Shown in pieces: positions 3,027 through 62,501 of a stretch of DNA of 64,000 nt (position 1 is its first letter; the number at the start of each line of letters is the position of its first letter). The notes under the pieces are model-generated. The model did no database searches. It had not been told where the DNA came from and saw only the letters and a program-made list of their open reading frames with translations. Position numbers and translations under genes: made by a program. The stretch is taken from positions 62,001-126,000 of IMG/VR virus record IMGVR_UViG_3300049048_000052; one strand, written 5' to 3'.

Positions 3027-3597
3027 CTTTGGTACTGAAGACTCCCAAATGATTAACTATAAGGCAGTTAGTCAATGGCTACTGAAGAGAGTAGGTCAGC
3101 CTTGGGATCAGATATACTCTGAACTGTTAGGTAAGATTAAAGGTTATGGATATGGCCGCATAGACCTGATTAAGCAATGTGTTAAATGGACAGTCATACC
3201 TAGAACCTTTAGGGATGATGATGGAACTATATATAAACCACATGGTCGTATGTTAGGTCCGGGTGAGTTCTATGTAGATCCAGAGGGCATCCTAAGAAGG
3301 GTGGCTAAACAGAAGAGGAAACGTAAGGTTCCTCAGGCTGAGCAGATAATCAGGATAGGAGATAACGAATATCTAAAGAGAGGGGAAAGCTGGTACTACG
3401 TAGCTAAGTTTAAGGAGAAGGTAGTTACTAAGGAGTTAGTCCTAGATGAACAAGAGAAGCCTGTATTCATCTACGATTATATGAAGAATGCTAAGGTGCC
3501 CCTGACCAAAGAAACAGTTACCTATAAAACTAATGTGCATCATTATCCTATTAGGAATGATGATCGAGTCAAGCTAAGAAAGAATGGTTATCTATAA
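3001..3597 (+). CDS. conserved hypothetical basic protein
   Basis: WLLKRVGQPWDQIYSEL motif recalled from uncharacterised phage/bacterial proteins. Confidence 0.65.
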   Translation: MRRIRKKYSFGTEDSQMINYKAVSQWLLKRVGQPWDQIYSELLGKIKGYGYGRIDLIKQCVKWTVIPRTFRDDDGTIYKPHGRMLGPGEFYVDPEGILRRVAKQKRKRKVPQAEQIIRIGDNEYLKRGESWYYVAKFKEKVVTKELVLDEQEKPVFIYDYMKNAKVPLTKETVTYKTNVHHYPIRNDDRVKLRKNGYL

Positions 3598-4328
3598 TGA
3601 ATGAGAAAGTAGTATTTGAATCCGCAGGCGGTTGGCTCCAAGTAATAGAGACAGCTAACAAGTTCTACTTTGCCCGTCGTAAGGGTAAGGACTCTGTTGC
3701 TGTGTTCTTAGTACGCCAGGGTAATGAGGGATGGGAAGTCCTTATTAGACGCCAACCCCTACCCCTACTTAATAGGGATACTGGTGATGATATGGAGTTA
3801 TACTCATGTCCTATTACAGGTGGGTATGAGTTAAACGAGTCTGCTGAAACATGCGCCCTACGTGAGGCATATGAGGAAGCAGGATATAAGCTGGATAAAC
3901 TTAGTTATCTTGGTGGTTACATCGTAGGTACCCAGACTGATGAGTATGTTGATATGTTCTGGGCTGACGTAACTAATGTTGAGCCTAGCATTCCTACTCA
4001 GGATGGTACTGTATTCGAGGCTGCCAGTGAGAATAAGTGGATGCCCATAGGTTTCCTGGATATGGACGGATCCTATGCTGCCCTGCAGATTGGGTTCCTT
4101 AGATTAAAAGAGGACCTGGCCCTGACCGAGGTAGAGAATATAGATTGGATGCCCCTAGCTATCAGATTATTAAACACCTGTATAGGTGATGTCTGTATAG
4201 AGGATCGCATACGTACCTATGACCTCATAGGTAAGCTAAGGTCTAAACTAGGTGAGGAATCCTTCGGTAGGTTATTAGGTACTAGATATTTAGAGCTATC
4301 CAATAAGATAGCGGAGGCCCTAGGTTAA
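3597..4328 (+). CDS. Nudix hydrolase
   Basis: Nudix box GGYELNESAETCALREAYEEAG. Confidence 0.9.
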   Translation: MNEKVVFESAGGWLQVIETANKFYFARRKGKDSVAVFLVRQGNEGWEVLIRRQPLPLLNRDTGDDMELYSCPITGGYELNESAETCALREAYEEAGYKLDKLSYLGGYIVGTQTDEYVDMFWADVTNVEPSIPTQDGTVFEAASENKWMPIGFLDMDGSYAALQIGFLRLKEDLALTEVENIDWMPLAIRLLNTCIGDVCIEDRIRTYDLIGKLRSKLGEESFGRLLGTRYLELSNKIAEALG

Positions 4329-5862: not shown

Positions 5863-8800
5863 ATGGCTAAGAAGAAGATTAATAGGCCTAGTTCCTCAAA
5901 GAGGGGATTCGCCAGTAGTGGTAGCATAATAGGTGGCTTCGGCAGTCGAGGCCCCAAGGGTAGCTCTGCTTATGAGGTGTGGAAAGAGCTAGGTAATGAT
6001 GGGGACGAGCAGCAGTTCCTACTAAGTATTAGGGGACCTGTTGGTGGTCCAGGTAAGTCAGCATATGAAGTCTGGTTAGATGAAGGCAACACTGGAACAG
6101 TAGGTGATTTCATCTATGCGTTACGCCGTCTCTCAGGTGGGGATGGTATCTCAGCCTATGACATATGGTTATCACTTGGTAATGTTGGTACTGAGGAAGG
6201 ATTCCTACAATCACTTAAGGGACCAATGGGTCCACAGGGTCCTCAAGGTAAGTCAGCATACCAAGTATGGTTAGACCAGGGTGTTATAGGTACTGAGTCT
6301 GACTTTATAAATGCATTAAGGGGACCAGCTGGTCCCACTGGTCCTAGTGGAAGTGTAGGACCTACTGGTCCCATTGGGCCAACAGGTCCCCAAGGATCTA
6401 CTGGTTCGGCTGGCCCTCGGGGTGCTGATGGTGTTACTGGTAAGTCAGCATATCAGGTATGGCTTGACCTAGGTAATATGGGTACCGAGCAACAGTTCCT
6501 TAATTCATTAAGAGGAAGTAATGGTGCTCAGGGCCCCCAAGGTATACAAGGCGCAACTGGTGCTAATGGGGTAGATGGTGAGTCTGCCTATAGCCTATGG
6601 TTATCCTTGGGTAACATGGGTACCGAGGAAGAATTTCTAGCCTCCTTTGTAGGACCAATGGGTCCACAGGGTCCTCAAGGTATACAGGGTGAATCTGGTT
6701 TAACCGGACCTAAGGGAGATACTGGACCCATAGGTTTGACTGGACCACAGGGTATTCCTGGTGAAGTAGGACCTAAGGGAGATCAAGGTGATACTGGTCC
6801 AGCAGGACCACAAGGTCCCATTGGTGCTCAAGGTATACAGGGTATACAAGGTGAGGTAGGACCTGCTGGTTTAACTGGGCCAATAGGCCCTGTTGGTCCC
6901 ATTGGACCTAAGGGTGAACCAGGAGATACAGGACCTGAGGGTCCACAGGGAGTCCAGGGTATACAAGGTGAGATAGGACCTCAGGGTATTGAGGGCCCCA
7001 TCGGAGCAACAGGACCACAAGGACCCTTTGGAGACTCAGCATATCAAGTATGGTTATCAGAGGGTAACCTAGGATCTCCCACTGACTTCCTGGATTCCCT
7101 AATAGGTGCACAGGGACCAACAGGTGCAATAGGACCGCAGGGTGAGATTGGTCCCATCGGACCCCAAGGACCACAAGGTATTACTGGTGCGCCAGGTCCC
7201 CAGGGACCTGCTGGTAACAATGGTGCCATAGGTGCAACAGGTCCCAAGGGTGATACTGGTGATACCGGACCACAAGGACCAATGGGACCCGAGGGACCCC
7301 AAGGTATACAAGGATTAACCGGAGAGACTGGACCTAAGGGTGACACTGGAGATCAGGGTCCTCAGGGTATACAAGGATTGATAGGGGCAACAGGAGCAAC
7401 AGGCCCACAGGGACCTAAGGGTGACACTGGTGAGCAGGGTATACAAGGTATAGCTGGTGCTACAGGTGCCACTGGACCCCAAGGTATACAAGGACCTATA
7501 GGTCCCTCTGGACCTCAAGGTGCTACGGGTCCAGAGGGACCCACTGGTGCAACGGGGGCTACCGGACCCAAAGGGGATACAGGTGATTCAGCATATCAAG
7601 CATGGTTAGCAGCAGGTAATACGGGCACAGAGGCAGACTTTCTTGCCTCTCTAGTAGGACCTCAGGGTCCAACCGGCGCTACGGGAGCAACAGGACCAAT
7701 AGGACCTGAGGGACCAGCTGGCCCTCAAGGTCCTGGCTCAGGCGATGTAATGGGGCCTGCTAGTTCTACTGTTACTGGAATAGCTATCTTCAGTAGCAAT
7801 ACAGGTAAAGCTATACAAAGTTCCACTGTTACTATTGATGTAAGCAATAATCTTAGTACAGCAGGAAACTTAAGTACTACAGGATCTGGTTACATTAGTA
7901 CTGCAAGGCCCATATTTTTGGGTACCTATACAGTAGCGGGGTTACCTACAGCATCAAGTTGGACCAATGCCATTGCTATTGCTACTAATGCTAATGCAGG
8001 TAATGGTGCCGCAGTTAGATCTGATGGTGCTAACTGGATTGATATGAGTTCTAACAGAGCAGCGAGTACAGATATGAACTCAGCTATGTTTGGGGCTCAG
8101 AGCTTTACGCCTAATGGTATCCCCCGTACCAATGGTAACTCAAGTAGACAGTTATTAAGCTCAAATGTAACCATTGATGCTAACAATGTACTGACTATAC
8201 CGGCATCCGGTAACCTTAAATTAAATAGTCCTGCCTTCCTTGGTACATACACAGTAGCAGGACTACCTGCTGCCGCTAGTTGGACTAATGCAATCGCAAT
8301 TGCCACTAACGCTAATGGGGGTGGGGGCACTATTGCAAAGTCTAATGGAACCAGCTGGTTAGATATAGTACAAGGTAAGACGGTAACTACTGCTACTAAT
8401 ATCATACCTAGTATTGCATTATCAGATACTGCACCATCAAGCCCTAGCAATGGGGACTTCTGGTTTAACTCTAGTCAATTAAAGTTAAAGGTTAGATATT
8501 TTGATGGTACAAATACCCAGTGGGTAGATGTATTACCTACTGGAGGCAGTAGTAGTACTGGGGTAAGCGTAGGTGATGTTGCTCCTGCAAGTCCTACTAA
8601 TGGAGCCCTATGGTGGGATAGTACTGTAGGTAAGTTAAGAATATATTATACAGACAGTGACTCTAGCCAATGGGTGGATGCCACATGGAACGGTAATGTA
8701 TCTAACCTTCAACTGTCCTCAGGTACAGCAGGCTCGCCCTCCCTATCATTTAGTGGGGATACAGGTACAGGACTCTACTTAGCATCAGCAGGTAACCTGG

Positions 8801-9165
8801 GTATAAGGGCAGCGGATACAGTATGGGTTGGTTCAGGTACTACACCGGCCACCACTACTACCCCTATACAGTCAGGTACTACAGCTAAGGCATTCGGTAG
8901 GTTCGTTGGATCTACTGCTACCATTAGTAAGTCCTACAACGTCAGCTCAGTAGTAAGGAATAGTTTAGGGGCATACACTGTTAACTTTACCCAGGCTATG
9001 CCTGATGCTAACTTTATAGTGGTGGGTGCGGGTGAGGCAGGCTCCAATAACGTAGCTGATGTTGTGGTCTATGCAAGAACAACCACCTCTGTATCCCTAG
9101 GTATGACCTTTGGTAATGGTAATAACTATGATGCCACTGTTAACTTTGCTATATTCAGTAACTAA
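5863..9165 (+). CDS. collagen-like tail fibre / adhesin
   Basis: long Gly-X-Y tracts interrupted by 8 SAY(E/Q)xW..GN.GT..FL.SL blocks; cyanophage-like [14 protein letters not shown] repeats; fibre-tip-like C-terminus. Confidence 0.85.
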
Positions 9166-9167: not shown

Positions 9168-10145
9168 ATGCCAGTATCCTTTCCCGCGTCACCCACACTT
9201 AATCAAACCTTTGTAGCTAATAGTATCACCTACGTATGGGATGGTAGCTCATGGTCAGTAGTAACGGGACAGAACATGATAGCAGGGGGTACCATATCAG
9301 GTAACCTTGTTGTCACAGGTTCTATTACTGCAGCCACAGTTGCCGTCGGTAGTAATCAGGTGGTCCTACCTACTGATCTACCCTCTCTAATAGAGGGGCT
9401 AACCACAAGTAGGAATACGGGTACACAGATAACAGTAGCATCAGGTAGAGCTATAACGACAGATGCTACAGGTACTAGTCGTAGGGTAACAACATTATCT
9501 AGTGCCATTACTAAGAGTCTCAGTTCTAACTGGGTAGTAGGTAATAGTAATGGAGGGTTAGATACAGGGGCCCTAGCTGCGGCCGCCACTTATCATATAT
9601 TCCTTATAGATAATACGAGTAACGTTGATGTACTCCTATCCACTAGCCTCACTCCTACTATGCCATCAGGCTATACATTCAGGAGAAGGATAGGTTCTAT
9701 CACTACAAGTGCTAGTACGATAGTAGAGTATACACAACAGGCTAAGTACTTTGAGTATAAGAATGTTATTAATGCCTTTAATAATTACAACGTATCAGCT
9801 ACAGGTGAGCTGATAGTAATGCCTATACCAATAGGTATCAGGTTAAAGGTACGTGCCTTCTATAGTCCTGGATATTCCCTTAGTGGATATGAAACCAGCC
9901 AAGTATGCCTTAGTCCAGATGTAACACCATATAGCCTTGGCAATGATATGCCTGCCAGGCCTGCATTCGTAGGTACAGTAGGAGGTTACTATGGAAGTTA
10001 TACAGATACCAGTGGTATTGAGATAGAGAGGGTAACAGATACCAGTGGGAGACTGTACTTCAGGAGAAGCTCCTTTGGTTACCTAGCTGGTGGCCTAAAT
10101 CAAAGTACCTTCAGAGTATTAGGCTATGAAGATATCGGTCTATAA
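9168..10145 (+). CDS. tail fibre/spike protein
   Basis: N-terminal MPVSFPASPTLNQTF..TYVWDG motif typical of cyanophage fibres; paralogous to the next gene. Confidence 0.75.
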   Translation: MPVSFPASPTLNQTFVANSITYVWDGSSWSVVTGQNMIAGGTISGNLVVTGSITAATVAVGSNQVVLPTDLPSLIEGLTTSRNTGTQITVASGRAITTDATGTSRRVTTLSSAITKSLSSNWVVGNSNGGLDTGALAAAATYHIFLIDNTSNVDVLLSTSLTPTMPSGYTFRRRIGSITTSASTIVEYTQQAKYFEYKNVINAFNNYNVSATGELIVMPIPIGIRLKVRAFYSPGYSLSGYETSQVCLSPDVTPYSLGNDMPARPAFVGTVGGYYGSYTDTSGIEIERVTDTSGRLYFRRSSFGYLAGGLNQSTFRVLGYEDIGL

Positions 10146-20331: not shown

Positions 20332-20421
20332 TGGGATGTAGCTGGTAATTGGTAACCACACAAACTGTTAATTTGTACCCCTAAACATGGGGCCCTGGAG
20401 GTTCGAGTCCTCCCATCCCAG
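20332..20421 (+). tRNA. trnN: tRNA-Asn(GUU) with long variable arm
   Basis: acceptor TGGGATG/CATCCCA, G73, U1:A72; ACAAA-CTGTTAA-TTTGT; variable stem CCCC-TAAACAT-GGGG; T arm GGAGG-TTCGAGT-CCTCC; no CCA. Confidence 0.85.
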
Positions 20422-21840: not shown

Positions 21841-22893
21841 TTGTCTTACCTAAGTGTAAAGACAGTGCGTAAATTAGCAAGTATACAGAAGATTGTAAGT
21901 GTAGAAGCCATTGAGGGTAAAGATAGAATAGTACAGTGTGGGGTCCTTGGCTGGTCAATGGTTACTCAGAAGTCTAATAACTTCCAAGTGGGTGACTACT
22001 GTGTGTTCTTTGAGATAGATAGTATATTACCTGAGGCAGAGTGGTCAGCCTTCTTAGAAGGTAAGACTAGGATCAGGACTAGGAAGTTTGGTGGTGTATT
22101 AGCACAAGGTCTCATGTTACCCATCGATGCTATACCTGAGGTAGAGTCACATCTACGTCAAGTGGATGGGGATATCGAAGGTCTAGATCTAACAGAGCTA
22201 TTAGGTGTAATACAATGGGAGCCTCCTGTTGATGCTAATACTGGTGAGAGTAGAGGTAACTTCCCTACCCATATCATTAGTAAGACCGATGAGATCAGGA
22301 TACAGAGTTGTCCTAAGGTCTTAGAGGAATTGAAGGGACTACCTTGGTATGCTGCCCTTAAGATGGATGGCTCCAGTGCTACCTACTTCTGGGATGATGC
22401 CCCGCCTAAGATGGATATGTCCCCAGGCTTTGTCAGTTGCTCACGTAATATGAGAAAGAGTGAGGACTCTCATTTCCATCAGGTTGCGCTGAGGTATGGA
22501 CTAGATGAGATATTGAAGACCAATGATTACCTAGTATTCCAGGGTGAGGTAGTAGGTCCAGGTATTCAAGCTAATAGGTTAGGACTTAAAGAGTTAGACC
22601 TATTCATATTTAACGTATATGACAGAAGGGAGAAGAGATACTTAACCCTATCTGAGGCTCTGCAAGTATGTAAGTTTGGTAAGCTCAAGCATGTACCCAT
22701 TATCGATCAAGGGGAGTCCTTTGATCTAACTCAGGAGGCATTAGTCCAAATGAGTATAGGTGAATATGAGGGCACTAAGAATCCTAGAGAGGGTATCGTA
22801 GTGCGCCCTCAGACTCCCGTCTATAGTAATGTATTGAGGGACAGACTGTCCTTCAAAGTAGTTAATCCTAATTATCTGTTGAAGTATGAATAG
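21841..22893 (+). CDS. ATP-dependent RNA ligase (Rnl2/DRB0094-like) with N-terminal OB-like domain
   Basis: motif I KMDGSS, FQGEVVGPGIQ, motif IV EGIVVR, motif V FKVVNPNYLLK; start probably GTG at ~21866. Confidence 0.9.
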   Translation: MSYLSVKTVRKLASIQKIVSVEAIEGKDRIVQCGVLGWSMVTQKSNNFQVGDYCVFFEIDSILPEAEWSAFLEGKTRIRTRKFGGVLAQGLMLPIDAIPEVESHLRQVDGDIEGLDLTELLGVIQWEPPVDANTGESRGNFPTHIISKTDEIRIQSCPKVLEELKGLPWYAALKMDGSSATYFWDDAPPKMDMSPGFVSCSRNMRKSEDSHFHQVALRYGLDEILKTNDYLVFQGEVVGPGIQANRLGLKELDLFIFNVYDRREKRYLTLSEALQVCKFGKLKHVPIIDQGESFDLTQEALVQMSIGEYEGTKNPREGIVVRPQTPVYSNVLRDRLSFKVVNPNYLLKYE

Positions 22894-26102: not shown

Positions 26103-26789
26103 ATGATGTATATTCCAAGTGATGGAATGTTTGGGGACATACTAACATTAATGGACCTGTCAAAGAAGGATCCTAGTAAGGTTATGCCTCTGTTTAAGGT
26201 ACCGGGGAGTAGACCCTTGGAGACCTTTACTTTAGAGGGTGTTATCTATAGCACACTACGTGAGATAGCAGCCTATACTGGATTCTCCGAATCTACTATA
26301 TCAGGTAGAAGGAGCGATGAAGAGTTCAGATATAGAAAGATATTTGGGGAGAATCATAAGAACAAATCTGTCTCTCCTGAGCTAATGAGGGCAGGTGGTA
26401 TGTCTGAGGATCGTATACCCAAAATGTCTCATCAGGGTATTGCTATAGATGAGATAGTCTGGGCTCTTATGTGTATCAACAGAGTAAACCTAATGGATGG
26501 TAGAGGCAGTGTTGCTATTACCCCCGTAGCTATTGAGATACTTGATAAGTTAGAGGTAATTAAGCCTGCCATAGCTAGTCCTGCCTCTATATTAAATAGT
26601 GTAATGAGTAGGAAGGGTAAATTTGTAGAGGCACAAGGTATAAAGATATACTCTGATTGTCTTAGGGAAGCAGCCAGGTTAGGAATAACTACTGATGCTC
26701 TGAACGCAGATGATGCTCCTATAGAGTTCACTGGTACTATGATTGCCCCCATGAAGACTATTCTGGAGCTATTATCCCAATGCTATTAG
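26103..26789 (+). CDS. putative DNA-binding protein
   Basis: HTH-like TLREIAAYTGFSESTIS; TATATAAG immediately upstream. Confidence 0.5.
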   Translation: MMYIPSDGMFGDILTLMDLSKKDPSKVMPLFKVPGSRPLETFTLEGVIYSTLREIAAYTGFSESTISGRRSDEEFRYRKIFGENHKNKSVSPELMRAGGMSEDRIPKMSHQGIAIDEIVWALMCINRVNLMDGRGSVAITPVAIEILDKLEVIKPAIASPASILNSVMSRKGKFVEAQGIKIYSDCLREAARLGITTDALNADDAPIEFTGTMIAPMKTILELLSQCY

Positions 26790-27217
26790 AAACTATTAAG
26801 TCTGACCTAAATGAGTCTAGGAGATCAGGGGACTCTGCTAAGCGAGATATCCTAACTGTATTACTATCCCAAGTCGAGGCCAGGATTAAAGATACAGGTC
26901 AAGAAGTAGTCGATGCCGATGTTATTAACCTAGTTAAGAAATGTATCAAGGAGAGAGAGGAGCTAGCTGGTGCATATGTAACAGCAGGTAGACCCACACT
27001 CAATATTGATACAGAGATATCTATACTTAAGGCATATATCCCTCAGCAAATAAGCCGAGAGGATTTAAAGACCATCATAACTACTGTTAAAGAAGTAAGT
27101 GCTAATGCAGATGGCCCCAAGTTAAAGGGTGTGGTCATGAAGTATCTGAAGCAGAACTATGATGGCACCTATGATCCAAGTATGGCATCTTCTATTATTG
27201 ATGAAATAAATAAATAA
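26780..27217 (+). CDS. yqeY: GatB/YqeY domain protein
   Basis: LLETIKSDLNESRR..E..ILKAYIPQQIS..MGVVM pattern. Confidence 0.85.
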   Translation: MLLETIKSDLNESRRSGDSAKRDILTVLLSQVEARIKDTGQEVVDADVINLVKKCIKEREELAGAYVTAGRPTLNIDTEISILKAYIPQQISREDLKTIITTVKEVSANADGPKLKGVVMKYLKQNYDGTYDPSMASSIIDEINK

Positions 27218-27399: not shown

Positions 27400-28185
27400 A
27401 TGACTAAGGCAAGGATAACCTCTGGCTACTGCGAGGGCAAGAGGGGTGGCGATAATGGGTACTCTCAATTAATGCTAGGTGTACTAATTCCTAAGGATCA
27501 TGACACCTGTAAATTGTATGGAGCAGTAGAGGACTTCCAACAATCTATTGCTATATGTTTAGAGGCTAACGAGCTAATGGATCCCTCATTAGAGCATGTG
27601 ATGAAGTGGTTACATACTAATATGTTCTCCCTTTCCTCCTATGCTTTTATGAAGGGTGAGACCTCTAACCATGAGATGCCCCAGGGATTCCTTCATTATA
27701 TTGAGGGAGCCATAGAGGATATGAAGGCTGATATAGGGGATGCACCTGACTTTCTGGTGTACTCCCATAAGAGTCTCATCCACCTGAATGAAATTAGAAT
27801 TAGAACTAGAGAAGTAGAAAGTAGATTTGTTGGTTGGAAGCGTAGCTTGGAGATGCAGTTACACCTCAAGGGACCTCTTGCCGTCCTACCGTTTGAGGTG
27901 AATGTCCCTCTCTCCTGGTATGAAGGTAAGCATAGTGCCCTCGTAGAGAAGCTGTTTGGTAAGAGATACCTTCTCCCGATTATTAATTATCATATACAAG
28001 TGTTAAACAGACTTTCCTCTTACTTCTTCTGGGCCTCTAGGGTTCAGGGTAAATTACTAGCTGGTAGATCTGAGGATAGTGGCCTCATTGAGAGATACTG
28101 GCAGGGTAAGATTGAGGAATTCGATATTGATTGTGCTAAACAGAAGGAAGCATATGTCGGAAGAACAATTGGAGCAACAGCCTGA
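27400..28185 (+). CDS. PduO-type cob(I)alamin adenosyltransferase-like protein
   Basis: GGDNG..PKD..YGAVED (cf. TGDxG..KD..YGxVDE) and LNRLSSYFFWASR (cf. LNRLSDxLFxxAR). Confidence 0.7.
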   Translation: MTKARITSGYCEGKRGGDNGYSQLMLGVLIPKDHDTCKLYGAVEDFQQSIAICLEANELMDPSLEHVMKWLHTNMFSLSSYAFMKGETSNHEMPQGFLHYIEGAIEDMKADIGDAPDFLVYSHKSLIHLNEIRIRTREVESRFVGWKRSLEMQLHLKGPLAVLPFEVNVPLSWYEGKHSALVEKLFGKRYLLPIINYHIQVLNRLSSYFFWASRVQGKLLAGRSEDSGLIERYWQGKIEEFDIDCAKQKEAYVGRTIGATA

Positions 28186-28492
28186 GGTAGAGACGACCTT
28201 TAAGGACACCTTAGATCAATACAGTAACCTAGTCCTAGGTTATGTGTTGCAGTCCTTAAAGGCCCGTAACTTCACCTTCTATGGGGTATCCTTGGTATCC
28301 CTAGTAGGTCTATTCTTAGCTCTAGAAGTAGGGGATATCTTTAATAAGATCCCTTTCTATGGAAGTCTAAGTACTACAGCATTCACAGGATGGCTTATCT
28401 ATTCTATGGTGACTGTAGAACGTAGGAAGGTACTCTTTGCTAAGCTTGATGAGATCAAGGCAGCAGTCTTAGGTACTGAAGAACAAACCTAG
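28154..28492 (+). CDS. CAAD/CURT1-like thylakoid membrane protein
   Basis: two TM helices ...GDIFNKIPFYGSL..TGWLIY then amphipathic ERRKVLFAKLDEIKAAVLG, matching the CURT1/CAAD pattern; start after AAGGAAG. Confidence 0.65.
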   Translation: MSEEQLEQQPEVETTFKDTLDQYSNLVLGYVLQSLKARNFTFYGVSLVSLVGLFLALEVGDIFNKIPFYGSLSTTAFTGWLIYSMVTVERRKVLFAKLDEIKAAVLGTEEQT

Positions 28493-28500: not shown

Positions 28501-28522
28501 AGAGGGACCCATGGGTCCCTCT
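28501..28522. terminator. GGACC/GGTCC hairpin
   Basis: AGAGGGACC-CATG-GGTCCCTCT. Confidence 0.6.
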
Positions 28523-29096: not shown

Positions 29097-29942
29097 ATGA
29101 CGGCCTGGTGTAAGACGGATAAGGGCATTACTGCTTCCTATAGAGGCAAGATATATAACATATTAAGTACTAATCCTAAATATGGTGAGATCATTGAGCT
29201 CATTAAGGCTAAGGAATGGGAGAGTGCTATTGAGTTACTTGATGTAGCTCAGACAATCGAAAAGAAATCTGATGGTGCCTTTAGTGTTAGGGATGGTCTA
29301 GTGTATGTTAAGGGTGAGGATCGTCCTCTACCCGAGGTGTTATCTAAGAGAGTCCTAGACTTCTATGAGGAGGGCCTAGATTATGCACCGTTACTTAAGT
29401 TCTGGGGCCATGTTAAGTTGAACCCCAGTAACCGGGCAGTGGATAGATTATATGAATGTCTAGAACATAATCATCATCCTATTACTGAGGACGGCAACTT
29501 CCTTGCATATAAGAAGGTAAGGCAGAGTCCTGATGGTAACCTATATGATATTTATACCTATAGGAATGATAAGGGGACCTTCCTTAATAATGTAGGTCTT
29601 ACTGTAACTATACAAAGGAATCTAGTTGATGAGAATATCGACCAAACATGCTCTTATGGGTTGCATGTGGCTTCTTATGATTATGCTGCTAGAGTTTATG
29701 GTTCTGATAGCGATGTGCTCCTAGAGGTCGAGGTTAATCCTAAGGACGTAGTTGCTATTCCTCGTGACTATAATAACCAAAAGATGAGAGTCTGTGCCTA
29801 TAAGGTATTAGCTATCAGTGCTGGTTATGAGAGGACTGAGGCATACGTTGGGTATGATCAGTACGAGGATGAGGACGAAGAGGAAGCCTATTGGGATGAC
29901 CATTACAGCTATCTCTATGGGGACTATGATGAAGAATACTAA
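29097..29942 (+). CDS. rIIB: rIIB-like lysis-inhibition protein
   Basis: NPS.RAV..LY..L...PIT.DG.FLAYKKV; CS.GLHV; V.VNP.DVVAIP.DYN..K.RVC. Confidence 0.85.
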   Translation: MTAWCKTDKGITASYRGKIYNILSTNPKYGEIIELIKAKEWESAIELLDVAQTIEKKSDGAFSVRDGLVYVKGEDRPLPEVLSKRVLDFYEEGLDYAPLLKFWGHVKLNPSNRAVDRLYECLEHNHHPITEDGNFLAYKKVRQSPDGNLYDIYTYRNDKGTFLNNVGLTVTIQRNLVDENIDQTCSYGLHVASYDYAARVYGSDSDVLLEVEVNPKDVVAIPRDYNNQKMRVCAYKVLAISAGYERTEAYVGYDQYEDEDEEEAYWDDHYSYLYGDYDEEY

Positions 29943-30513
29943 GATAATTGGTATAGATATTGATGGAACTGTAGCCGATACGGGAGAGTGGTTTGCAAAG
30001 GCTCTCTCCAGGGCTACAGGTAAACAGTTGGGTTACTTGGATATCAGTGGTCATGGTTGGGTAGAGGAGGGTATATGCACTCCTCTCCAGTGTGAGGCAG
30101 TACTAAGAGAGTACTGGGATACTGGGTATATGGAAGTGGAACCTATGGAGGGAGCACGTAGGAAGATAAGAGGTCTATTGTTTAGTAGTGCGGCCCCCTG
30201 GGAGATCATATTTGTTACCGCTAGACCTATAGATATGCATGATAAAACGGAGGAGTGGCTGTGTAAACATGACTTCTATTATGATAGGTTGATCTGCACG
30301 GGCTCCCATAATAAGCATGAGCTACCCATAGACTTCTCCCTATTCATTGAGGATAGATATGAGACAGCCCTAGCATTTGCTGAGAAGGGTGTCCCATGTC
30401 TCCTCATTGATAACCCTTGGAACGCAGGTAAACCTGAGCATGACCTAATACATAGGTGTTATGGGGGTTGGGAAGAGGTTGGTGCCTATATTAGCGAAGG
30501 TGTGTATGTCTAA
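29929..30513 (+). CDS. HAD-family 5'(3')-deoxyribonucleotidase
   Basis: IGIDIDGTVAD, FVTARP, FIED, PWN. Confidence 0.85.
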   Translation: MKNTKIIGIDIDGTVADTGEWFAKALSRATGKQLGYLDISGHGWVEEGICTPLQCEAVLREYWDTGYMEVEPMEGARRKIRGLLFSSAAPWEIIFVTARPIDMHDKTEEWLCKHDFYYDRLICTGSHNKHELPIDFSLFIEDRYETALAFAEKGVPCLLIDNPWNAGKPEHDLIHRCYGGWEEVGAYISEGVYV

Positions 30514-36683: not shown

Positions 36684-37472
36684 ATGGATCTGGCAGTCAG
36701 GATCAAGGAATTCTATGAGTATGCATACCGCACCTTCCTACCCAGGAGGATGCCAGTCATACTTAGAGTAGATGGTAAGGCATTCCACTCTTATACAAGG
36801 GGTATGAATAGACCCTTTGATGAGAGATTGGAAGAAGTAATGAACCTTGTAGCTATTAAGCTATGTAAGGAAATACAAGGTGCTCAGATAGCCTATGTGC
36901 AATCTGATGAGATCAGTATATTAATTCATGGTTATAAGAAGCTCAATAGTGAGTCATGGTTTGGTAATAATGTACAGAAGATGACCAGTGTTAGTGCTGG
37001 TATAGCTAGTGCATGGTTTACCTACCACTCATCTAGGTTAACTACTGTATCTGAGGATATAGGTAATACCCAACAGTTTATAGAATCTAAGCTAAAGCCA
37101 GCAGTATTTGACTCTAGGGTATTCGTACTCCCTGAATCAGAGGTATGTAACTACTTCATATGGAGACAGCAGGATGCTACTCGCAATAGTATCTCTATGC
37201 TTGCCCAGTCTTTATACTCCCATAAGGAGTTAAATGGGGTTACATGTAATCAGATGCAGGAGCTCTGTTTCCAGAAGGGTCATAACTGGAATGATCTACC
37301 TATCATTAGAAAGAGGGGTAGATGTATTCGTAAGTTTATTAGGTATACACCTGTAGCTGGAAGACCTGAGGGTAATACAGTTGCTAGATCCTATTGGGAT
37401 GTAGACTATGAGACTCCTATCTTTACTGAGAATCGTAACTATATTGAAGATCTATTAAAGACATATGAGTAG
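36684..37472 (+). CDS. thg1: tRNA(His) guanylyltransferase Thg1/TLP
   Basis: RVDGKAFH, YVQSDEIS, FDSRV, NYF.WRQ.DA.RNSI. Confidence 0.93.
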   Translation: MDLAVRIKEFYEYAYRTFLPRRMPVILRVDGKAFHSYTRGMNRPFDERLEEVMNLVAIKLCKEIQGAQIAYVQSDEISILIHGYKKLNSESWFGNNVQKMTSVSAGIASAWFTYHSSRLTTVSEDIGNTQQFIESKLKPAVFDSRVFVLPESEVCNYFIWRQQDATRNSISMLAQSLYSHKELNGVTCNQMQELCFQKGHNWNDLPIIRKRGRCIRKFIRYTPVAGRPEGNTVARSYWDVDYETPIFTENRNYIEDLLKTYE

Positions 37473-41981: not shown

Positions 41982-42146
41982 GCCTGGTATGCACTAAGGT
42001 AGTGCGATTAGACCACATATGTTTGGGCTCATAGTTCAATGGATAGAATGATTCCCTCCTAAGGATTAGATCTAGGTTCGATTCCTAGTGGGCCTGCTTT
42101 TTATATGGTGGTTTAGTTATAGTGGGTTCGATTCCCACACCAGGCG
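41982..42146 (+). ncRNA. outer tRNA shell enclosing tRNA-Arg(CCU)
   Basis: acceptor GCCTGGT/ACCAGGC plus G; D arm GCAC-TAAGGTA-GTGC; extended stem ATTAGACCAC-ATAT/ATAT-G-GTGGTTTAGT; T arm GTGGG-TTCGATT-CCCAC. Confidence 0.8.
42025..42096 (+). tRNA. trnR: tRNA-Arg(CCU)
   Basis: GGGCTCA/TGGGCCT plus G; D loop AATGGATA (A20); loop CT-CCT-AA; T arm CTAGG-TTCGATT-CCTAG. Confidence 0.88.
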
Positions 42147-50117: not shown

Positions 50118-50396
50118 ATGAAACCAGGACCTAAGAAGGGTAGTAGTCAGAGTAAATCCCATGTTGCCAAGAGGGCCAAGGCTGTAAAAGGTAAGGCCAA
50201 TGGTATGTTTAAGGATGGAAGACGTTCCTATCGTTCCATAGCGGGAGCTAGGAATAGCGATGGAAAAGTTGTGCATCACAAGGACGGTGATAGGACCAAT
50301 AATTCAAGATCTAATCTAAAGGTCCTGAATGATGGTCCTAGTAGGCCAGGTAGGAAGACAACTAGTAAGCATGAAAGACTTACTAGACGTAAGTAG
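50118..50396 (+). CDS. small HNH endonuclease-like protein
   Basis: VVHHKDGDRTNNSRSNLKVL. Confidence 0.75.
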   Translation: MKPGPKKGSSQSKSHVAKRAKAVKGKANGMFKDGRRSYRSIAGARNSDGKVVHHKDGDRTNNSRSNLKVLNDGPSRPGRKTTSKHERLTRRK

Positions 50397-50567
50397 CCAG
50401 TGTAGCTTAAAAGGTAAAGCGTACCCCTCTCAGGGTATACCGAAAGGGTCCATAGGTAATAGGTGTAGTTGCAAGATTCTGTGAGAGTTATAAACTCCGT
50501 ATTCGGCAGAGTCCCAGACTGCACAACTATACCTATGGATATGAGGGTTCGATCCCCTTCACTGGCG
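50396..50567 (+). ncRNA. 172-nt tRNA-like RNA with a giant variable-region domain
   Basis: GCCAGTG/CACTGGC plus G; D arm GCTT-AAAAGGTA-AAGC; TACCC-CTCTCA-GGGTA; inserted helices TCCATAGGTA/TACCTATGGA, GTGTAGT/ACTGCAC, GATTCTG/CAGAGTC; T arm GAGGG-TTCGATC-CCCTT. Confidence 0.78.
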
Positions 50568-55793: not shown

Positions 55794-56198
55794 ATGGTTA
55801 AACCACGACGACGTAGAAGGTCTGCTGGCTTTAAGCTGTTGAGGCAATGGGCCTTTGTTACAATTGGTTTGATCGTAGTATCAATGGTACTTACCTCAAT
55901 CAACCCAATGCTACTGAACTCTAACCTCGCGCTGTTAGGCTTCTTGGTATGGGCAATATTAGCTATAGGTACTATAGGTTTTGCTGCCTATAGTCTGGAT
56001 GTAGCAATCCAGGCCTCAAAGGTAAGGAAGATCTTCGTTGAGAGGTTTCCTACCTACGAGGCCCTGTCCTGGTATGACTTCTTGGGTATATACCCAGAGG
56101 AAGTGCTGGATAACATTGAGCTCCTAGCTCAGATATGTCGAGAGGAGGAAGACCTCCATGTTTCTTTGTTTGAACTATTAAGGAGAGACTTTCGGTGA
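55794..56198 (+). CDS. two-TM membrane protein
   Basis: basic N-terminus plus two TM segments; coupled to the SPFH gene. Confidence 0.6.
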   Translation: MVKPRRRRRSAGFKLLRQWAFVTIGLIVVSMVLTSINPMLLNSNLALLGFLVWAILAIGTIGFAAYSLDVAIQASKVRKIFVERFPTYEALSWYDFLGIYPEEVLDNIELLAQICREEEDLHVSLFELLRRDFR

Positions 56199-57115
56199 AG
56201 TTAAGCCGTTTGATTTGTGGTGTGAGTTTATTTGCTGGTTCCTTATTCCTAGGCGCCTGCGGGGTAATCCCCGGCACTAATGTGGAAACTGTCCAGCCTG
56301 GCTATACGGGCCTCTTGATTGACCTCTATGGAGGTAATAAGGGTATCGAGAATGCTCAGATTGTTAACGGTAGGGTTTGGTACAACGGCTATACTCAAGA
56401 CATTGTTGTATTCCCTACCTTTGTTAGTACATACTCCTTCACCTCTAGTGTAGAAGAGGGTGCTGCTAGGGATGAATCTATCACCTTCGCCGTGGGTGGC
56501 AGTCCAGTCTCTGGGGACGTTGGGGTATCTTTTGGGTTCAGTACTGAGCAAGCACCGGGTAGCACTAAGACCAAACTGCATCAGTTTTATGAGACTTACC
56601 GTAAGGAACCTCAACAATTCATGCAGTCTGATATGCGTAACGGCCTGCGGGATTGCTTCACTAGAGCTGCCGAGGACCTAAAACTGATTCCCTCCGTGCT
56701 ATCCACCAACCAACAGAAGCTAGTGGCCAAGGTAAGAGACTGCCTCCAAATACGCTACCCTGTTGTTAATATCTCTGATGTGAGTCTATTGGGACCTCTG
56801 CGTCTACCTCCTGATATCCAAAAGAGTATCAATGAACAACAGACAGCTCAACAGGCCGCACAGACTGCGGAGGCCAATAAGCGTAAGGTAGAAGCTGAAG
56901 CCGCCTCTAATGTAGCTAGAGCTAAGGGCGAAGCCCAGGTAACTATTGAACAAGCCCGTGCTGAGGCGGAGGCCAACAGGCTACGCTCCGGCTCCGTTAC
57001 TAATCAACTGCTGGAACTGGAACGCTTACGTGTTGAGCGTGCTCGTATTGAGAAGTGGGATGGTCAACAGGCCCCCACTATCCAAACACCAGTAGTCCAG
57101 TTGGGCGGCAAGTAG
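56195..57115 (+). CDS. SPFH/Band-7 family lipoprotein
   Basis: lipobox LGA|C; VQPGYTG; LP..IQ.SI; AE/Q-rich coiled coil; IEKWDG. Confidence 0.85.
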   Translation: MKLSRLICGVSLFAGSLFLGACGVIPGTNVETVQPGYTGLLIDLYGGNKGIENAQIVNGRVWYNGYTQDIVVFPTFVSTYSFTSSVEEGAARDESITFAVGGSPVSGDVGVSFGFSTEQAPGSTKTKLHQFYETYRKEPQQFMQSDMRNGLRDCFTRAAEDLKLIPSVLSTNQQKLVAKVRDCLQIRYPVVNISDVSLLGPLRLPPDIQKSINEQQTAQQAAQTAEANKRKVEAEAASNVARAKGEAQVTIEQARAEAEANRLRSGSVTNQLLELERLRVERARIEKWDGQQAPTIQTPVVQLGGK

Positions 57116-57704: not shown

Positions 57705-58095
57705 GAGGGACCTCGCTGACGCCAAGTTACGTGTTAAGGAGATAGAGGATAAGTTACAGGCCACTCAGCTTGTAAGGGCCTCTAGCCCAGAGTTTAAAGA
57801 TAAGATGGTAGGACCTTACAATATAAGTAGGTTCCATCATGTTCTTGATCTATTGGTTGCAGGTAGGACCTGTGTCTTCCGGCATGAATCCTATGGGGAA
57901 TATGTTGTATATACCCATAAGGAGACAGGTCATGTTAAGGTAAGGAAGACGAAGCCAGGTCCTAATGAAGGGATTATGGCTATCCAACCACCCTATCAAC
58001 AGATCAATGACCAAACTATATTCAGATGTATGGTCCTGTCTGATACGGGGGAGTGGTTTGTTTATCCTGAAGAGGATAAAGATGAGAAGCCCTAG
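57643..58095 (+). CDS. hypothetical protein
   Basis: likely start MKPEEV. Confidence 0.6.
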   Translation: MTVLVKQGELLMKPEEVAVLERDLADAKLRVKEIEDKLQATQLVRASSPEFKDKMVGPYNISRFHHVLDLLVAGRTCVFRHESYGEYVVYTHKETGHVKVRKTKPGPNEGIMAIQPPYQQINDQTIFRCMVLSDTGEWFVYPEEDKDEKP

Positions 58096-58429
58096 AGTAG
58101 CGCTCATTATCTTGCTACTAAGTCTAGTAGCAGCACCTGTTTTGGCAAGGAAACCTAATCCTAAGGGTGCAACCTTCTGTGAACTGGGTAGCGGCTACTG
58201 GACTGTAACTATAGTCTCGGGTATCTCTGGAGAGGAGATGTCAGTAGTTATCTCAGAGTTCCTTGCTAAGGAAGAGCTGATCACTTACTACACTTTTATG
58301 GGCCTATGCAATAATAGGACTCCTAGAGAGTTGTGGGTACAGGGCCTTAATGAGGCCAGTGCTAAGAAGGTCTACAACTTCCTGAGAAGGAGGTATCCCG
58401 ATAGGGAAGTGTATAACATTAGACCATAA
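57965..58429 (+). CDS. putative secreted protein
   Basis: signal peptide MRSPRVALIILLLSLVAAPVLA (start ~58082). Confidence 0.55.
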   Translation: MKGLWLSNHPINRSMTKLYSDVWSCLIRGSGLFILKRIKMRSPRVALIILLLSLVAAPVLARKPNPKGATFCELGSGYWTVTIVSGISGEEMSVVISEFLAKEELITYYTFMGLCNNRTPRELWVQGLNEASAKKVYNFLRRRYPDREVYNIRP

Positions 58430-58489
58430 ATCTTAGGGCGTAAGCCCTTATTCATTCCTCAGTGGCGCAGTGGATAGCGCACCCGCCTT

Positions 58490-60464: not shown

Positions 60465-60505
60465 TTTGACTAACATGGGTATATAGAAGTATACTCATGT
60501 AACAT

Positions 60506-60586
60506 GGGTGGATGACCGAGAGGCCGATGGTGCCTGACTGTAAATCAGGTCGTAACAGCGCGCTGGTTCGAATCCAGCTCCACCCA
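60506..60586 (+). tRNA. trnY: tRNA-Tyr(GUA)
   Basis: GGGTGGA/TCCACCC plus A; CCTGA-CTGTAAA-TCAGG; T arm GCTGG-TTCGAAT-CCAGC. Confidence 0.92.
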
Positions 60587-60595
60587 TTTCAATAA

Positions 60596-60678
60596 CGGCA
60601 GGCTAGGCGAGTTGGTGATCGCTGGGGAGTGTACAACCCTACCTTATAGGAACGTTGGTTCGAATCCAACCCTGCTGA
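60596..60678 (+). tRNA. degenerate class II tRNA-like gene (anticodon ambiguous)
   Basis: CGGCAGG/CCTGCTG plus A; GCGA/TCGC D stem; 9-nt loop AGTGTACAA; long variable arm; T arm GTTGG-TTCGAAT-CCAAC. Confidence 0.5.
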
Positions 60679-62402: not shown

Positions 62403-62405
62403 TTT

Positions 62406-62480: not shown

Positions 62481-62501
62481 TTATCACTATAAAGGATATG
62501 T

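What the first reader, a model, noticed from the sequence alone, without database searches (positions are those of the whole stretch)
28154..28492. Phage-encoded CURT1/CAAD-like thylakoid curvature protein
Seen: an acidic N-terminus, two TM helices joined by KIP, a GW-L-I-Y motif and an amphipathic ERRKVLFAKLDEIKAAVLG end. Established: CURT1/CurT shapes thylakoids, and CAAD anchors cyanobacterial aminoacyl-tRNA synthetases to them. Inference: the phage may remodel thylakoids or displace membrane-anchored synthetases; it lies two genes from YqeY.
Basis: partly seen in the sequence, partly recalled or inferred. Interest (0 to 1): 0.62.

Follow-up and report, generated by a model that had tools for sequence, protein, structure and literature searches.

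The report
Cyanophage gene resembling thylakoid-shaping CurT
A 252-kb soil cyanophage carries a small membrane-protein gene that looks like a very distant relative of CurT/CAAD, the cyanobacterial module that bends thylakoid membranes and anchors enzymes to them; I found no such gene reported in a virus, but its function is untested.

Summary
Window 28154-28492 (+) is a real-looking 112-aa gene: it has a Shine-Dalgarno site, phage-typical codon usage, a terminator hairpin, and two gene callers call it. It has an acidic N-terminus, two hydrophobic helices joined by an N-K-I-P loop, a TGWLIY motif and a C-terminal helix.

The CAAD/CURT1 reading is supported as remote homology, not as family membership.
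- Pfam CAAD is the only Pfam hit, at 21 bits. That is below the 30.7-bit cut-off, and cellular CAAD domains score 31.7-125 bits.
- hhalign against 26 CurT proteins gives 94% probability.
- My own CurT and aaRS-CAAD HMMs align it end to end at 21-23 bits. None of 6000 shuffles exceeded 13 bits.
- Most of the score comes from the loop and the soluble C-terminal helix.
- Searched alone against 101 Cyanobacteriota genomes, its seven best hits all fall on CAAD loci.
- Several invariant residues are lost, and it has no close relative in the libraries searched.

The genome is a complete 251,780-bp phage. It shares about 50 syntenic genes with Microcoleus phage My-WqHQDG and has an NblA-like domain. 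No CAAD-like gene turned up in GenBank phages, IMG/VR or PHROGs.

Thylakoid insertion and remodelling is the most likely function, but it is an inference. Displacement of membrane-anchored synthetases is speculative.

The parts
28143..28150 (+). Shine-Dalgarno-like GAAGGAAG; its GGA core ends 5 nt before the ATG
   Evidence: read from the sequence
28154..28492 (+). CDS of the 112-aa CAAD/CurT-like membrane protein (P0001), stop codon included
   Evidence: ORF and translation. Gene calls in two assemblies. Codon usage. Pfam CAAD 21 bits. hhalign 94.3%. Own HMMs 21-23 bits, aligned end to end.
28181..28258 (+). residues 10-35: N-terminal cytoplasmic helix, acidic and amphipathic (muH 0.43 for residues 10-27)
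   Evidence: hydrophobic-moment scan; AF2 helix 10-35 with the CurT alignment; aligns with low confidence to the pre-TM1 helix of CurT
28271..28342 (+). residues 40-63: transmembrane helix 1
   Evidence: Kyte-Doolittle maximum 2.0 at residue 54; AF2 helix 40-63; aligns to CurT TM1
28343..28366 (+). residues 64-71: short lumenal loop with N64-K-I-P67, matching the N-[DE]-[IV]-P loop conserved in nearly all the CurT sequences aligned; 3 residues shorter than in CurT
   Evidence: P67 is invariant across all 24 aligned sequences; shuffling the loop costs about 8 bits
28367..28411 (+). residues 72-86: transmembrane helix 2, with T78-G-W-L-I-Y83 matching CurT Y-[ST]-x-W-F-x-Y; the R-Y-L that follows in CurT is replaced by S-M and a gap
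   Evidence: W80 invariant; AF2 helix 72-86; hhalign alignment
28415..28471 (+). residues 88-106: C-terminal cytoplasmic helix (R91, L94, K102 and then G107), matching the CurT/CAAD C-terminal helix R-x-E-L...L-K-x-Q-V-x-G
   Evidence: R91, L94 and G107 are invariant in alignment A2; this segment alone scores 9.1 bits, and shuffling it costs 13 of 22 bits
28501..28522 (+). terminator-like hairpin AGAGGGACCC-ATGG-GTCCCTCT (as written here: 10-nt arms, 2-nt centre; the scan counts 9 pairs and a 4-nt loop) with a T-rich tail, 9 nt after the stop
   Evidence: consensus scan; 4 such sites in the region against 2.9 expected, so this is suggestive only
27400..28185 (+). upstream gene (261 aa) with a PduO-type cobalamin-adenosyltransferase-like N-terminal half; its last 32 nt overlap the start of the CAAD-like gene in another frame, which suggests translational coupling
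   Evidence: Pfam Cob_adeno_trans 56.7 bits; coordinates
26780..27217 (+). YqeY/GatB-like gene, two genes upstream (context only)
   Evidence: Pfam YqeY 83.4 bits; phrog_1460

Best explanation
Window 28154-28492 encodes a small integral membrane protein. It is most likely a very diverged, stand-alone relative of the cyanobacterial CurT/CURT1-CAAD module, carried by a jumbo cyanophage of filamentous soil or mat cyanobacteria (Microcoleus-type host).

Shown:
- It is a gene-like ORF.
- It has the CURT1 four-helix layout: cytoplasmic N-terminal amphipathic helix, TM hairpin with a short N-x-I-P loop, cytoplasmic C-terminal helix.
- It has specific but sub-threshold sequence similarity to CAAD along its whole length.

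Inferred:
- During infection the hairpin inserts into host thylakoid membranes. CAAD is an autonomous membrane-targeting module that is thylakoid-specific in cyanobacteria.
- It then acts like a minimal CurT. The wedge-shaped hairpin and the amphipathic helix would bend or re-organise thylakoid membranes, either on their own or by joining host CurT oligomers.
- This would fit alongside the phage's NblA-like gene as a second means of reworking the photosynthetic apparatus.

The changed TM2 motif (R-Y-L lost) and the shortened loop suggest altered, possibly antagonistic, behaviour relative to host CurT.
For: Sequence similarity to CAAD:
- CAAD is the only Pfam family hit out of 24,736 (E 3e-4; residues 38-107 against model positions 12-85 of 85).
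- hhalign against 26 CurT proteins: 94.3% probability, E 1e-7, 67 columns.
- Three HMMs I built (32 stand-alone CurT; those plus 7 aaRS-CAAD; fused only) give 21.0, 22.3 and 22.9 bits. Each aligns HMM positions about 37-145 to residues 3-109.
- 6000 shuffles, including ones that preserve the topology, reach at most 13.2 bits. The next-best phage ORF scores 7.5 bits.
- The signal lies mainly outside the TM helices. Shuffling the soluble C-terminal helix costs 13 bits, the loop 8 bits and the TM helices 7 bits.
- MAFFT places P67, W80, R91, L94 and G107 in columns that are invariant across all 24 sequences.

Reciprocal test and background:
- P0001 alone against six-frame translations of 101 Cyanobacteriota genomes: the seven best hits (19.4-21.4 bits, 27-34% identity) all lie on loci that Pfam CAAD marks. 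14 of the 31 hits with E<=0.1 do so.
- In those 101 genomes the best non-family hits to Pfam CAAD reach only about 19 bits.
- Three related cyanophage records give no CAAD hit even at E<=1.

Architecture and charge:
- AF2 with the CurT alignment gives helices 10-35, 40-63, 72-86 and 88-106, with pLDDT 70.
- The charge distribution fits N-in/C-in by my reading: K36 and R38 before TM1, and RRK after TM2.
- This matches the published CURT1 architecture (PMC9950537).

Host context:
- About 50 syntenic ORFs are shared with Microcoleus phage My-WqHQDG at 24-58% amino-acid identity. That phage is linked to its host by CRISPR spacers (bioRxiv 10.1101/2023.04.12.536658).
- One structural protein hits only cyanophages.
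- An NblA-like domain scores above the Pfam cut-off.
- The source is a soil metagenome.
- CAAD targets membranes on its own, and thylakoids specifically in cyanobacteria (PMC4893482).
Against: - The Pfam score (21 bits) is below the gathering cut-off (30.7). It is far below all cellular CAAD domains sampled, including the divergent picocyanobacterial ones at 58-73 bits.
- Five of the 12 residues invariant in 26 CurT proteins are lost: G to T74, R to S84, Y to M85, L to a gap, E to V93. Three residues are also deleted at the loop/TM2 junction.
- No homologue was found among 5.8 billion or 1.84 billion proteins. So there is no conservation, covariation or selection evidence.
- The two assemblies and a second soil study carry identical DNA.
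- The single-sequence AF2 model is poor (pLDDT 51). The better model leans on the CurT alignment, so it is not independent.
- ESM Atlas look-alikes by sequence features are unnamed clusters. By structure they are generic helical hairpins. The CAAD cluster appears only weakly, at TM 0.40.
- In the reciprocal search a second, unrelated family of about 490-aa ORFs recurs at up to 18 bits on the TM region. This shows how close the noise floor lies.
- No RNA or protein evidence exists, and nothing tests localisation or membrane bending.
Confidence: 0.5

Rival explanations
1. It is an unrelated small phage membrane protein, such as a class II-type holin or antiholin, a superinfection-exclusion protein or an unknown membrane factor. 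Its likeness to CAAD would be chance or convergence between two-helix hairpins.
For: - The score is below the family threshold.
- There are no intermediates or homologues.
- Several invariant residues are lost.
- An N-in/C-in two-TM layout is also the class II holin layout (established knowledge).
- It gives a weak hit to a 53-position PHROG of unknown function over the hairpin (phrog_24854, E 0.0067).
- TM-region noise reaches 18 bits in the reciprocal search.
- An rIIB-like gene lies two genes downstream.
Against: - Most of the score comes from the loop and the soluble C-terminal helix, not from TM composition.
- Shuffles that preserve the topology never exceed 10.3 bits.
- CAAD is the only Pfam hit, and the best reciprocal hits are CAAD loci.
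- No holin or lysis PHROG is hit.
- The flanking genes are not endolysins. The amidase and LytH-like homologues lie about 157 kb away, at genome positions 246473-248063.
- The C-terminus has net charge 0, not the strongly basic tail typical of holins.
Confidence: 0.2
2. It is a true CAAD relative that acts as a decoy or competitor and not as a curvature protein. It would occupy the thylakoid sites or partners used by host CAAD modules: CurT oligomers, the ATP synthase alpha and beta subunits that bind the ValRS CAAD, or the anchoring sites of aaRS-CAAD enzymes. This would re-route translation or energy supply during infection.
For: - CAAD of Anabaena ValRS co-purifies with AtpA and AtpB, and it is what keeps the enzyme on thylakoids (PMC4893482).
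- Microcoleus vaginatus carries a stand-alone CurT plus two CAAD domains inside long open frames of 843 and 1208 aa, which look like aaRS fusions.
- The fused-only HMM scores P0001 at least as well as the CurT HMM: 22.9 against 21.0 bits.
- The surrounding accessory region is rich in tRNA functions: RNA ligase, YqeY, Thg1 and six tRNA genes.
- The lost R-Y-L motif could make a dominant-negative subunit.
Against: - No interaction evidence exists. The complex prediction with M. vaginatus CurT gave no verdict.
- Gene neighbourhood in a phage accessory region is weak evidence of shared function.
- Deleting CAAD from ValRS barely affects the enzyme's catalytic parameters (PMC4893482), so displacing it may achieve little.
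- The exact host and its aaRS complement are unknown.
Confidence: 0.15
3. It is a thylakoid-anchoring partner for the adjacent enzyme. The CAAD-like hairpin would be co-translated with the upstream PduO-type adenosyltransferase-like protein (32-nt overlap). It would tether that protein to thylakoids non-covalently, or through a rare frameshift fusion. This would mimic how cyanobacteria fuse CAAD to aaRSs and, in lichen Nostoc, to VnfD.
For: - The two genes overlap by 32 nt, and a Shine-Dalgarno site lies inside the upstream gene.
- CAAD is a modular anchor that has been fused to enzymes repeatedly. GluRS-CAAD probably arose by fusion of neighbouring gltX and curt1 genes (PMC4893482). A VnfD-CAAD fusion is reported in PMC5987646.
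Against: - No slippery site or fused reading is evident in 28061-28185.
- Overlapping starts are common in phages and do not imply that the products form a complex.
- The function of the upstream ORF is itself uncertain, since only its N-terminal half matches Pfam.
Confidence: 0.07

Closest known systems
CurT (Synechocystis Slr0483) / plant CURT1A-D, the stand-alone members of Pfam CAAD (PF14159)
   Same: - It is a stand-alone small protein.
- It has the predicted four-helix layout: N-terminal amphipathic helix, TM hairpin, C-terminal helix, both ends cytoplasmic.
- It keeps the N-x-[IV]-P loop, the W in TM2, the R...L...K...G pattern in the C-terminal helix, and an acidic N-terminal region.
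- Its best hits in both directions are CurT/CAAD.
   Different: - It is encoded by a phage.
- It is 112 aa against about 140-160 aa, lacking the long N-terminal extension.
- It shares only 14-27% identity with the CurT proteins aligned.
- Its Pfam score of 21 bits is below the 30.7-bit cut-off.
- It has lost G, R-Y-L and E of the invariant set, and it has a 3-residue deletion at the loop/TM2 junction.
- No functional data exist.
CAAD domains inserted in cyanobacterial class I aminoacyl-tRNA synthetases (ValRS, GluRS, IleRS, LeuRS and others)
   Same: It has the same hairpin-plus-helix module. It scores equally well against an HMM built only from fused CAADs (22.9 bits). It sits among tRNA-related phage genes.
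   Different: It is not fused to any enzyme. The synthetase-anchoring role therefore cannot apply directly, and only competition or mimicry could.
Cyanophage genes that act on the photosynthetic apparatus (psbA, hli, nblA)
   Same: It is probably a host-derived gene carried by a cyanophage that acts on the photosynthetic membrane system. This phage also has an NblA-like domain.
   Different: It would target membrane architecture, not reaction centres or antennae. This phage lacks psbA and hli. The gene is far more diverged from host versions than typical genes of this kind.
Class II (two-TM) phage holins
   Same: It is a small phage protein with two TM helices and an N-in/C-in layout.
   Different: It gives no holin family hit, has no adjacent endolysin and lacks a basic C-terminal tail. 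Its sequence similarity points to CAAD instead.

Membership tests
Pfam CAAD (PF14159) / CURT1-CurT | Scores at or above the curated gathering threshold (30.7 bits) of the family model | tested here: not met
   21.0 bits, E 3e-4; 20.3 bits in the six-frame search. Cellular members score 31.7-125 bits.
Pfam CAAD (PF14159) / CURT1-CurT | Significant profile similarity to family members over the whole domain | tested here: met
   hhalign gives 94.3% probability and E 1e-7 over 67 columns. My own HMMs give 21-23 bits with end-to-end alignments. Shuffles reach at most 13.2 bits. The seven best reciprocal hits are CAAD loci.
Pfam CAAD (PF14159) / CURT1-CurT | Four-helix architecture: N-terminal amphipathic helix, two TM helices forming a hairpin, C-terminal helix, both termini on the cytoplasmic/stromal side | tested here: met
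   Based on hydropathy, helical moment and the segment charges; the flanking basic residues (K36, R38; R90, R91, K92) are read. AF2 gives helices 10-35, 40-63, 72-86 and 88-106 (not independent of the CurT alignment). The architecture is as described in PMC9950537. This is prediction only.
Pfam CAAD (PF14159) / CURT1-CurT | Conserved loop motif N-[DE]-[IV]-P-L after TM1 | tested here: met
   N64-K-I-P67-F; P is invariant in all 24 aligned sequences.
Pfam CAAD (PF14159) / CURT1-CurT | TM2 motif G-x-G-Y-[ST]-x-W-F-x-Y-R-Y-L, invariant G, Y, W, F, R, Y, L in 26 non-pico CurT proteins | tested here: not met
   The phage protein has T-T-A-F-T-G-W-L-I-Y-S-M-(gap). W is kept, and Y to F and F to L are conservative. 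G, R, Y and L are lost. The motif is also relaxed in picocyanobacterial members.
Pfam CAAD (PF14159) / CURT1-CurT | C-terminal helix motif R-x-E-L ... L-K-x-Q-V-x-G | tested here: met
   R91-K-V-L94 ... I-K102-A-A-V-L-G107. R, L and G are invariant and K nearly so; E is replaced by V. The segment alone scores 9.1 bits.
Pfam CAAD (PF14159) / CURT1-CurT | Thylakoid localisation, oligomerisation and membrane-curving activity | not testable with these tools
   The complex prediction with M. vaginatus CurT returned no verdict. This needs localisation, TEM and liposome assays.
aaRS-inserted CAAD | Domain is inserted in, or fused to, a class I aminoacyl-tRNA synthetase | tested here: not met
   It is a stand-alone 112-aa ORF. 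The upstream ORF is in a different frame and is Cob_adeno_trans-like, not an aaRS.
Class II holin | Match to a holin family, a place in a lysis cassette next to an endolysin, and a basic C-terminal tail | tested here: not met
   No holin PHROG or Pfam hit. The neighbours are not lysins. The amidase homologue is about 157 kb away. C-terminal net charge is 0.

The most novel reading that the evidence does not exclude
This may be the first virus-encoded thylakoid-shaping protein. A jumbo cyanophage of Microcoleus-type hosts would have captured a CurT/CAAD module and pared it down. It would use it to re-sculpt or dismantle host thylakoid architecture during infection, for example by dissolving convergence zones or clearing space for replication and assembly, or to hijack the thylakoid-targeting code that anchors host enzymes. 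That would define a new class of cyanophage host-takeover gene acting on membrane architecture, not on photosystems or pigments.
Probability: 0.3. Interest if true: 0.8.

Novelty: new variant of a known kind. Interest (0 to 1): 0.6.

Why it matters
Cyanophages are known to carry photosystem, high-light-inducible and phycobilisome-degradation genes. No virus-encoded CURT1/CurT/CAAD protein turned up in any of these searches:
- GenBank phages by tblastn;
- IMG/VR by motif scans;
- PHROGs;
- the held literature.

If this protein does enter thylakoids, it would show that phages manipulate the physical architecture of photosynthetic membranes. Electron microscopy of infected filamentous cyanobacteria has long shown thylakoid rearrangement with no known viral effector (my own recollection of the LPP-1/Plectonema literature, not checked here).

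A 112-aa natural minimal variant that lacks the R-Y-L motif would also be a useful probe. It could help decide which parts of CURT1 are needed for targeting, oligomerisation and bending. That question is still open, and no structure has been solved (PMC9950537).

It also concerns biocrust and benthic-mat Microcoleus, which matter ecologically and, for anatoxin producers, toxicologically.

Tried and rejected
- Sequence homologues of P0001: only the protein itself was found in 5.8 billion proteins, 1.84 billion representatives, GenBank phages, IMG/VR, GTDB genome contigs by peptide patterns and PDB. No family alignment could therefore be built.
- Relatives through the neighbouring genes in IMG/VR: none.
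- IMG/VR scans with CurT-derived motifs: none, with and without P0001 in the alignment.
- Single-sequence AF2: pLDDT 51, unusable.
- ESM Atlas: by sequence features, only unnamed clusters under 0.9. By structure, generic hairpins; the top row is a cyanobacterial ATP-synthase-subunit-I-like cluster, built on a low-confidence model. I did not take this as evidence.
- Atlas fold search with the alignment-based model: a CAAD cluster at TM 0.40/0.37. This is weak and circular.
- Complex prediction of P0001 with Microcoleus vaginatus CurT: no verdict, so it counts neither for nor against binding.
- Selection analysis: not possible, because the Logan and JGI contigs are identical over 20 kb and the second soil study shows no variants.
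- RNA evidence: no RNA runs hold the sequence.
- Adding picocyanobacterial CAADs to the HMM did not raise the score (19.6 bits).
- A tail-protein query for kinship was uninformative because the family is broad across myoviruses.
- A frameshift fusion with the upstream ORF was considered. No slippery site is evident, so it is kept only as a low-probability rival.
- The NCBIfam hit (pcaD, 13.8 bits) and the PDB hits (KAI2 hydrolases, E 0.35) were dismissed as noise.
Full report
**1. The observation**

The ORF at window 28154-28492 (+) translates to a 112-aa protein, P0001.
- An acidic N-terminus, with net charge -4 over residues 1-38.
- Two hydrophobic stretches, about residues 39-63 and 68-88, joined by VGDIFNKIPFYG.
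- T78-G-W-L-I-Y83.
- A C-terminal VERRKVLFAKLDEIKAAVLG.

YqeY (26780-27217, Pfam 83 bits) is two genes upstream.

The ORF behaves like a gene.
- GAAGGAAG lies just upstream of the ATG, its GGA core ending 5 nt before it.
- Codon usage in this frame (0.243 bits/codon) is typical of the phage's genes (0.228 +/- 0.10). The other five frames are negative.
- Two assemblies' gene callers give the same product.
- A GC-rich hairpin with a T-rich tail follows the stop at 28501-28522.
- The start overlaps the end of the upstream gene (27400-28185) by 32 nt.

**2. The genome**

The window is bases 62001-126000 of a 251,780-bp IMG/VR virus record, rated 100% complete. The record has 42.6% G+C. It comes from a soil metagenome and was seen again, with identical sequence, in a second soil study.

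Several results place it among cyanophages.
- A baseplate-region protein hits only cyanophages: Microcoleus phage My-WqHQDG at 41% identity, and the Microcystis Ma-LMM01/MaMV group at 34%.
- A local tblastn of all ORFs against the 163-kb My-WqHQDG record finds about 50 shared genes at 24-58% identity. They are collinear in the structural and replication modules.
- The phage has an NblA-like domain just above the Pfam cut-off (26.3 against 25 bits). It has no psbA or hli.

Only three ORFs in 62-126 kb have counterparts in My-WqHQDG. The gene therefore sits in a lineage-specific accessory region. That region also holds an RNA ligase, an ATP-grasp protein, a GIY-YIG protein, YqeY, an rIIB-like protein, NT5C, Thg1, NUDIX and tRNA genes.

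**3. Is it CAAD/CurT-like?**

*Family scans.* Pfam returns a single family, CAAD (PF14159). The score is 21.0 bits (E 3e-4), covering residues 38-107 and model positions 12-85 of 85. This is below the 30.7-bit gathering score. PHROGs and NCBIfam give nothing meaningful.

*Calibration on real CAAD genes.* I fetched cyanobacterial genomes with a 16S primer pattern and scanned them with the Pfam model.
- In Microcoleus, Trichodesmium, Scytonema and Pseudanabaena, and in 101 genomes sampled across the phylum, true CAAD domains score 31.7-125 bits, nearly all 56 or more.
- They occur as stand-alone ORFs of about 150 aa, or inside open frames of 750-1200 aa, which look like aaRS fusions.
- A Gloeobacterales genome has none.
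- The few non-family hits stop at about 19 bits.
- Picocyanobacterial CAADs, reputedly divergent (PMC6395441), still score 58-73 bits.

P0001 is thus far more diverged than any cellular member sampled. It fails the family's own threshold.

*Positive evidence for remote homology.*
- HMMs that I built from 32 stand-alone CurT proteins, from those plus 7 fused CAADs, and from the fused ones alone give 21.0, 22.3 and 22.9 bits. Each has one collinear alignment from HMM position about 37 to 145 of 146, against residues 3-109 of 112.
- 3000 full shuffles reach at most 13.2 bits. 3000 shuffles that keep each segment in place reach at most 10.3 bits. The reversed sequence scores below 0.
- The next-best of the 1114 six-frame phage ORFs scores 7.5 bits.
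- hhalign of P0001 against an alignment of 26 CurT proteins gives 94.3% probability and E 1e-7 over 67 columns.
- MAFFT aligns P0001 with 23 CurT proteins so that P67, W80, R91, L94 and G107 fall in fully invariant columns.

*Where the score comes from.* Shuffling only the soluble C-terminal helix costs 13 bits, only the loop 8 bits, and only the two TM helices 7 bits. The C-terminal 27 residues alone score 9.1 bits. So the similarity is not a hydrophobic-composition artefact.

*Reciprocal test.* I searched P0001 alone against six-frame translations of the 101 Cyanobacteriota genomes.
- The seven best hits (19.4-21.4 bits, 27-34% identity) all lie on the loci that Pfam CAAD had marked.
- 14 of the 31 hits with E<=0.1 do so.
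- An unrelated family of about 490-aa ORFs recurs at up to 18 bits over the TM region only, so the margin over noise is small.

*Negative evidence.*
- Five of the 12 residues invariant in the 26 CurT proteins are changed: G to T74, R to S84, Y to M85, L to a gap, E to V93.
- Three residues are missing at the loop/TM2 junction.
- No homologue of P0001 exists in the large protein libraries. Conservation therefore cannot be tested.

I put the probability of true, remote homology at about 0.75.

**4. Architecture**

- Hydropathy and the flanking charges give an N-in, two-TM, C-in topology with a short lumenal loop. The charges are K36 and R38 before TM1, a near-neutral loop, and R90-R91-K92 after TM2. 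The hydropathy and segment charges are; the flanking residues are read.
- The single-sequence AF2 model is poor (pLDDT 51).
- With the CurT alignment, AF2 gives four helices at 10-35, 40-63, 72-86 and 88-106, with pLDDT 70. This is compatible with the CURT1 architecture of two TM and two soluble helices, the first one amphipathic (PMC9950537). It is not independent evidence.
- Residues 10-27 have a helical moment of 0.43, similar to the corresponding CurT helix at 0.44.
- Fold searches are uninformative, and no CURT1 structure has been solved.

**5. Mechanism**

Shown: a gene-like ORF in a cyanophage encodes a CAAD-like hairpin protein.

Inferred from family knowledge:
- CAAD is an autonomous membrane-targeting module that goes to thylakoids in cyanobacteria (PMC4893482).
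- CurT/CURT1 proteins oligomerise and bend thylakoid membranes.
- Loss of CurT abolishes curved convergence zones in Synechocystis (PMC9950537).

The most likely role is therefore a phage-made thylakoid membrane protein that alters thylakoid architecture. It could act on its own or by mixing into host CurT assemblies. The loss of the R-Y-L motif and the shortened loop make an antagonist role plausible.

Rivals:
- A chance look-alike with a holin or other membrane function (0.2). The score decomposition, the lack of any lysis context (the amidase and LytH-like homologues are about 157 kb away) and the neutral C-terminus count against it.
- A decoy for CAAD partners, such as ATP synthase or aaRS-CAAD anchoring sites (0.15). 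This fits the tRNA-rich neighbourhood and the two long CAAD-bearing frames, probably aaRS fusions, in Microcoleus. There is no direct support, and the complex prediction gave no verdict.
- An anchor for the overlapping upstream PduO-like enzyme (0.07). The analogy is with gene fusions such as GluRS-CAAD and VnfD-CAAD.

**6. Comparison and novelty**

The protein works most like stand-alone CurT. It is not a member of Pfam CAAD by that family's threshold and is not an aaRS-CAAD.

No phage-encoded CurT/CAAD was found in any of these searches:
- GenBank phages, using either P0001 or a Microcoleus CurT as query;
- three related cyanophage records at E<=1 (the My-WqHQDG record is a 163-kb partial genome);
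- IMG/VR by motif scans;
- 38,880 PHROG families;
- the held literature.

I rate it a new variant of a known kind: a pared-down, highly diverged CAAD-type module in a virus.

**7. Verdict**

CAAD-like is probably right, as remote homology. It is not a family member. The function is untested.
- Interest is 0.6. If thylakoid targeting and remodelling were shown, this would be the first viral effector of thylakoid architecture.

Noticed in passing
window 58479-59155 (+), with an ORF at 58540-59010 (-): A group I catalytic intron (Rfam RF00028, 54.1 bits against a gathering score of 50). An HNH endonuclease ORF (Pfam HNH_2, 28.9 bits) lies inside its span on the opposite strand. The flanking ORFs 57965-58429 and 59238-59942 have no Pfam hit, so the interrupted gene is not identified.
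   Followed up: partly
window 50396-50567 (+): An Rfam tRNA match (38.7 bits) spans 172 nt, and ARAGORN did not call it. It may be an intron-containing or otherwise interrupted tRNA gene. My-WqHQDG likewise has a 286-nt feature annotated as tRNA-Arg.
   Followed up: no
window 20332-20421; 60505-60678; 62329-62481; 42025-42097: Six tRNA genes were called by ARAGORN: an unusually long (90-nt) tRNA-Asn, two tandem tRNA-Tyr, tRNA-Leu(TAA), tRNA-Leu(GAG) and tRNA-Arg(CCT).
   Followed up: no
window 21841-22893, 26780-27217, 36684-37472, 29818-30513, 3597-4328: A set of tRNA and nucleotide maintenance genes lies in the same accessory region: an RNA ligase with a PHA02142 OB-fold, YqeY/GatB-like, a Thg1-like tRNA-His guanylyltransferase, an NT5C 5'-nucleotidase and a NUDIX hydrolase. 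They suggest tRNA repair or a counter-defence against host anticodon nucleases.
   Followed up: partly
window 56195-57115 (+): An SPFH/Band 7 domain protein (Pfam 26 bits, cut-off 23.6). SPFH proteins organise membrane microdomains, including in cyanobacteria, so this is a second candidate membrane-organising gene in the phage.
   Followed up: no
window 27400-28185 (+): A 261-aa ORF whose N-terminal half matches PduO-type cobalamin adenosyltransferase (Cob_adeno_trans, 56.7 bits). It is an unusual phage gene, and its end overlaps the CAAD-like gene by 32 nt.
   Followed up: partly
window 5863-9165 and 9168-10145 (+): An 1100-aa protein with long collagen triple-helix repeats (172 bits) is followed by an ORF with a weak, sub-threshold match to the Mtd second domain (22.7 bits against 24.6). 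These are probably tail-fibre or receptor-binding proteins.
   Followed up: no
outside the window: genome 165291-165785 (L014:1165-1659), domain at genome 165627-165764: An NblA-like domain (26.3 bits, cut-off 25) lies at the C-terminal end of a 164-aa ORF, far longer than a typical NblA of about 60 aa. The true start may be internal. It supports a cyanobacterial host.
   Followed up: partly
window 29097-29942 (+), and genome 148601-150688: An rIIB-like protein (281 aa, matching only the C-terminal part of the rIIB profiles) lies two genes downstream of the CAAD-like gene. The rIIA homologue is about 58 kb away, so the pair is split.
   Followed up: no
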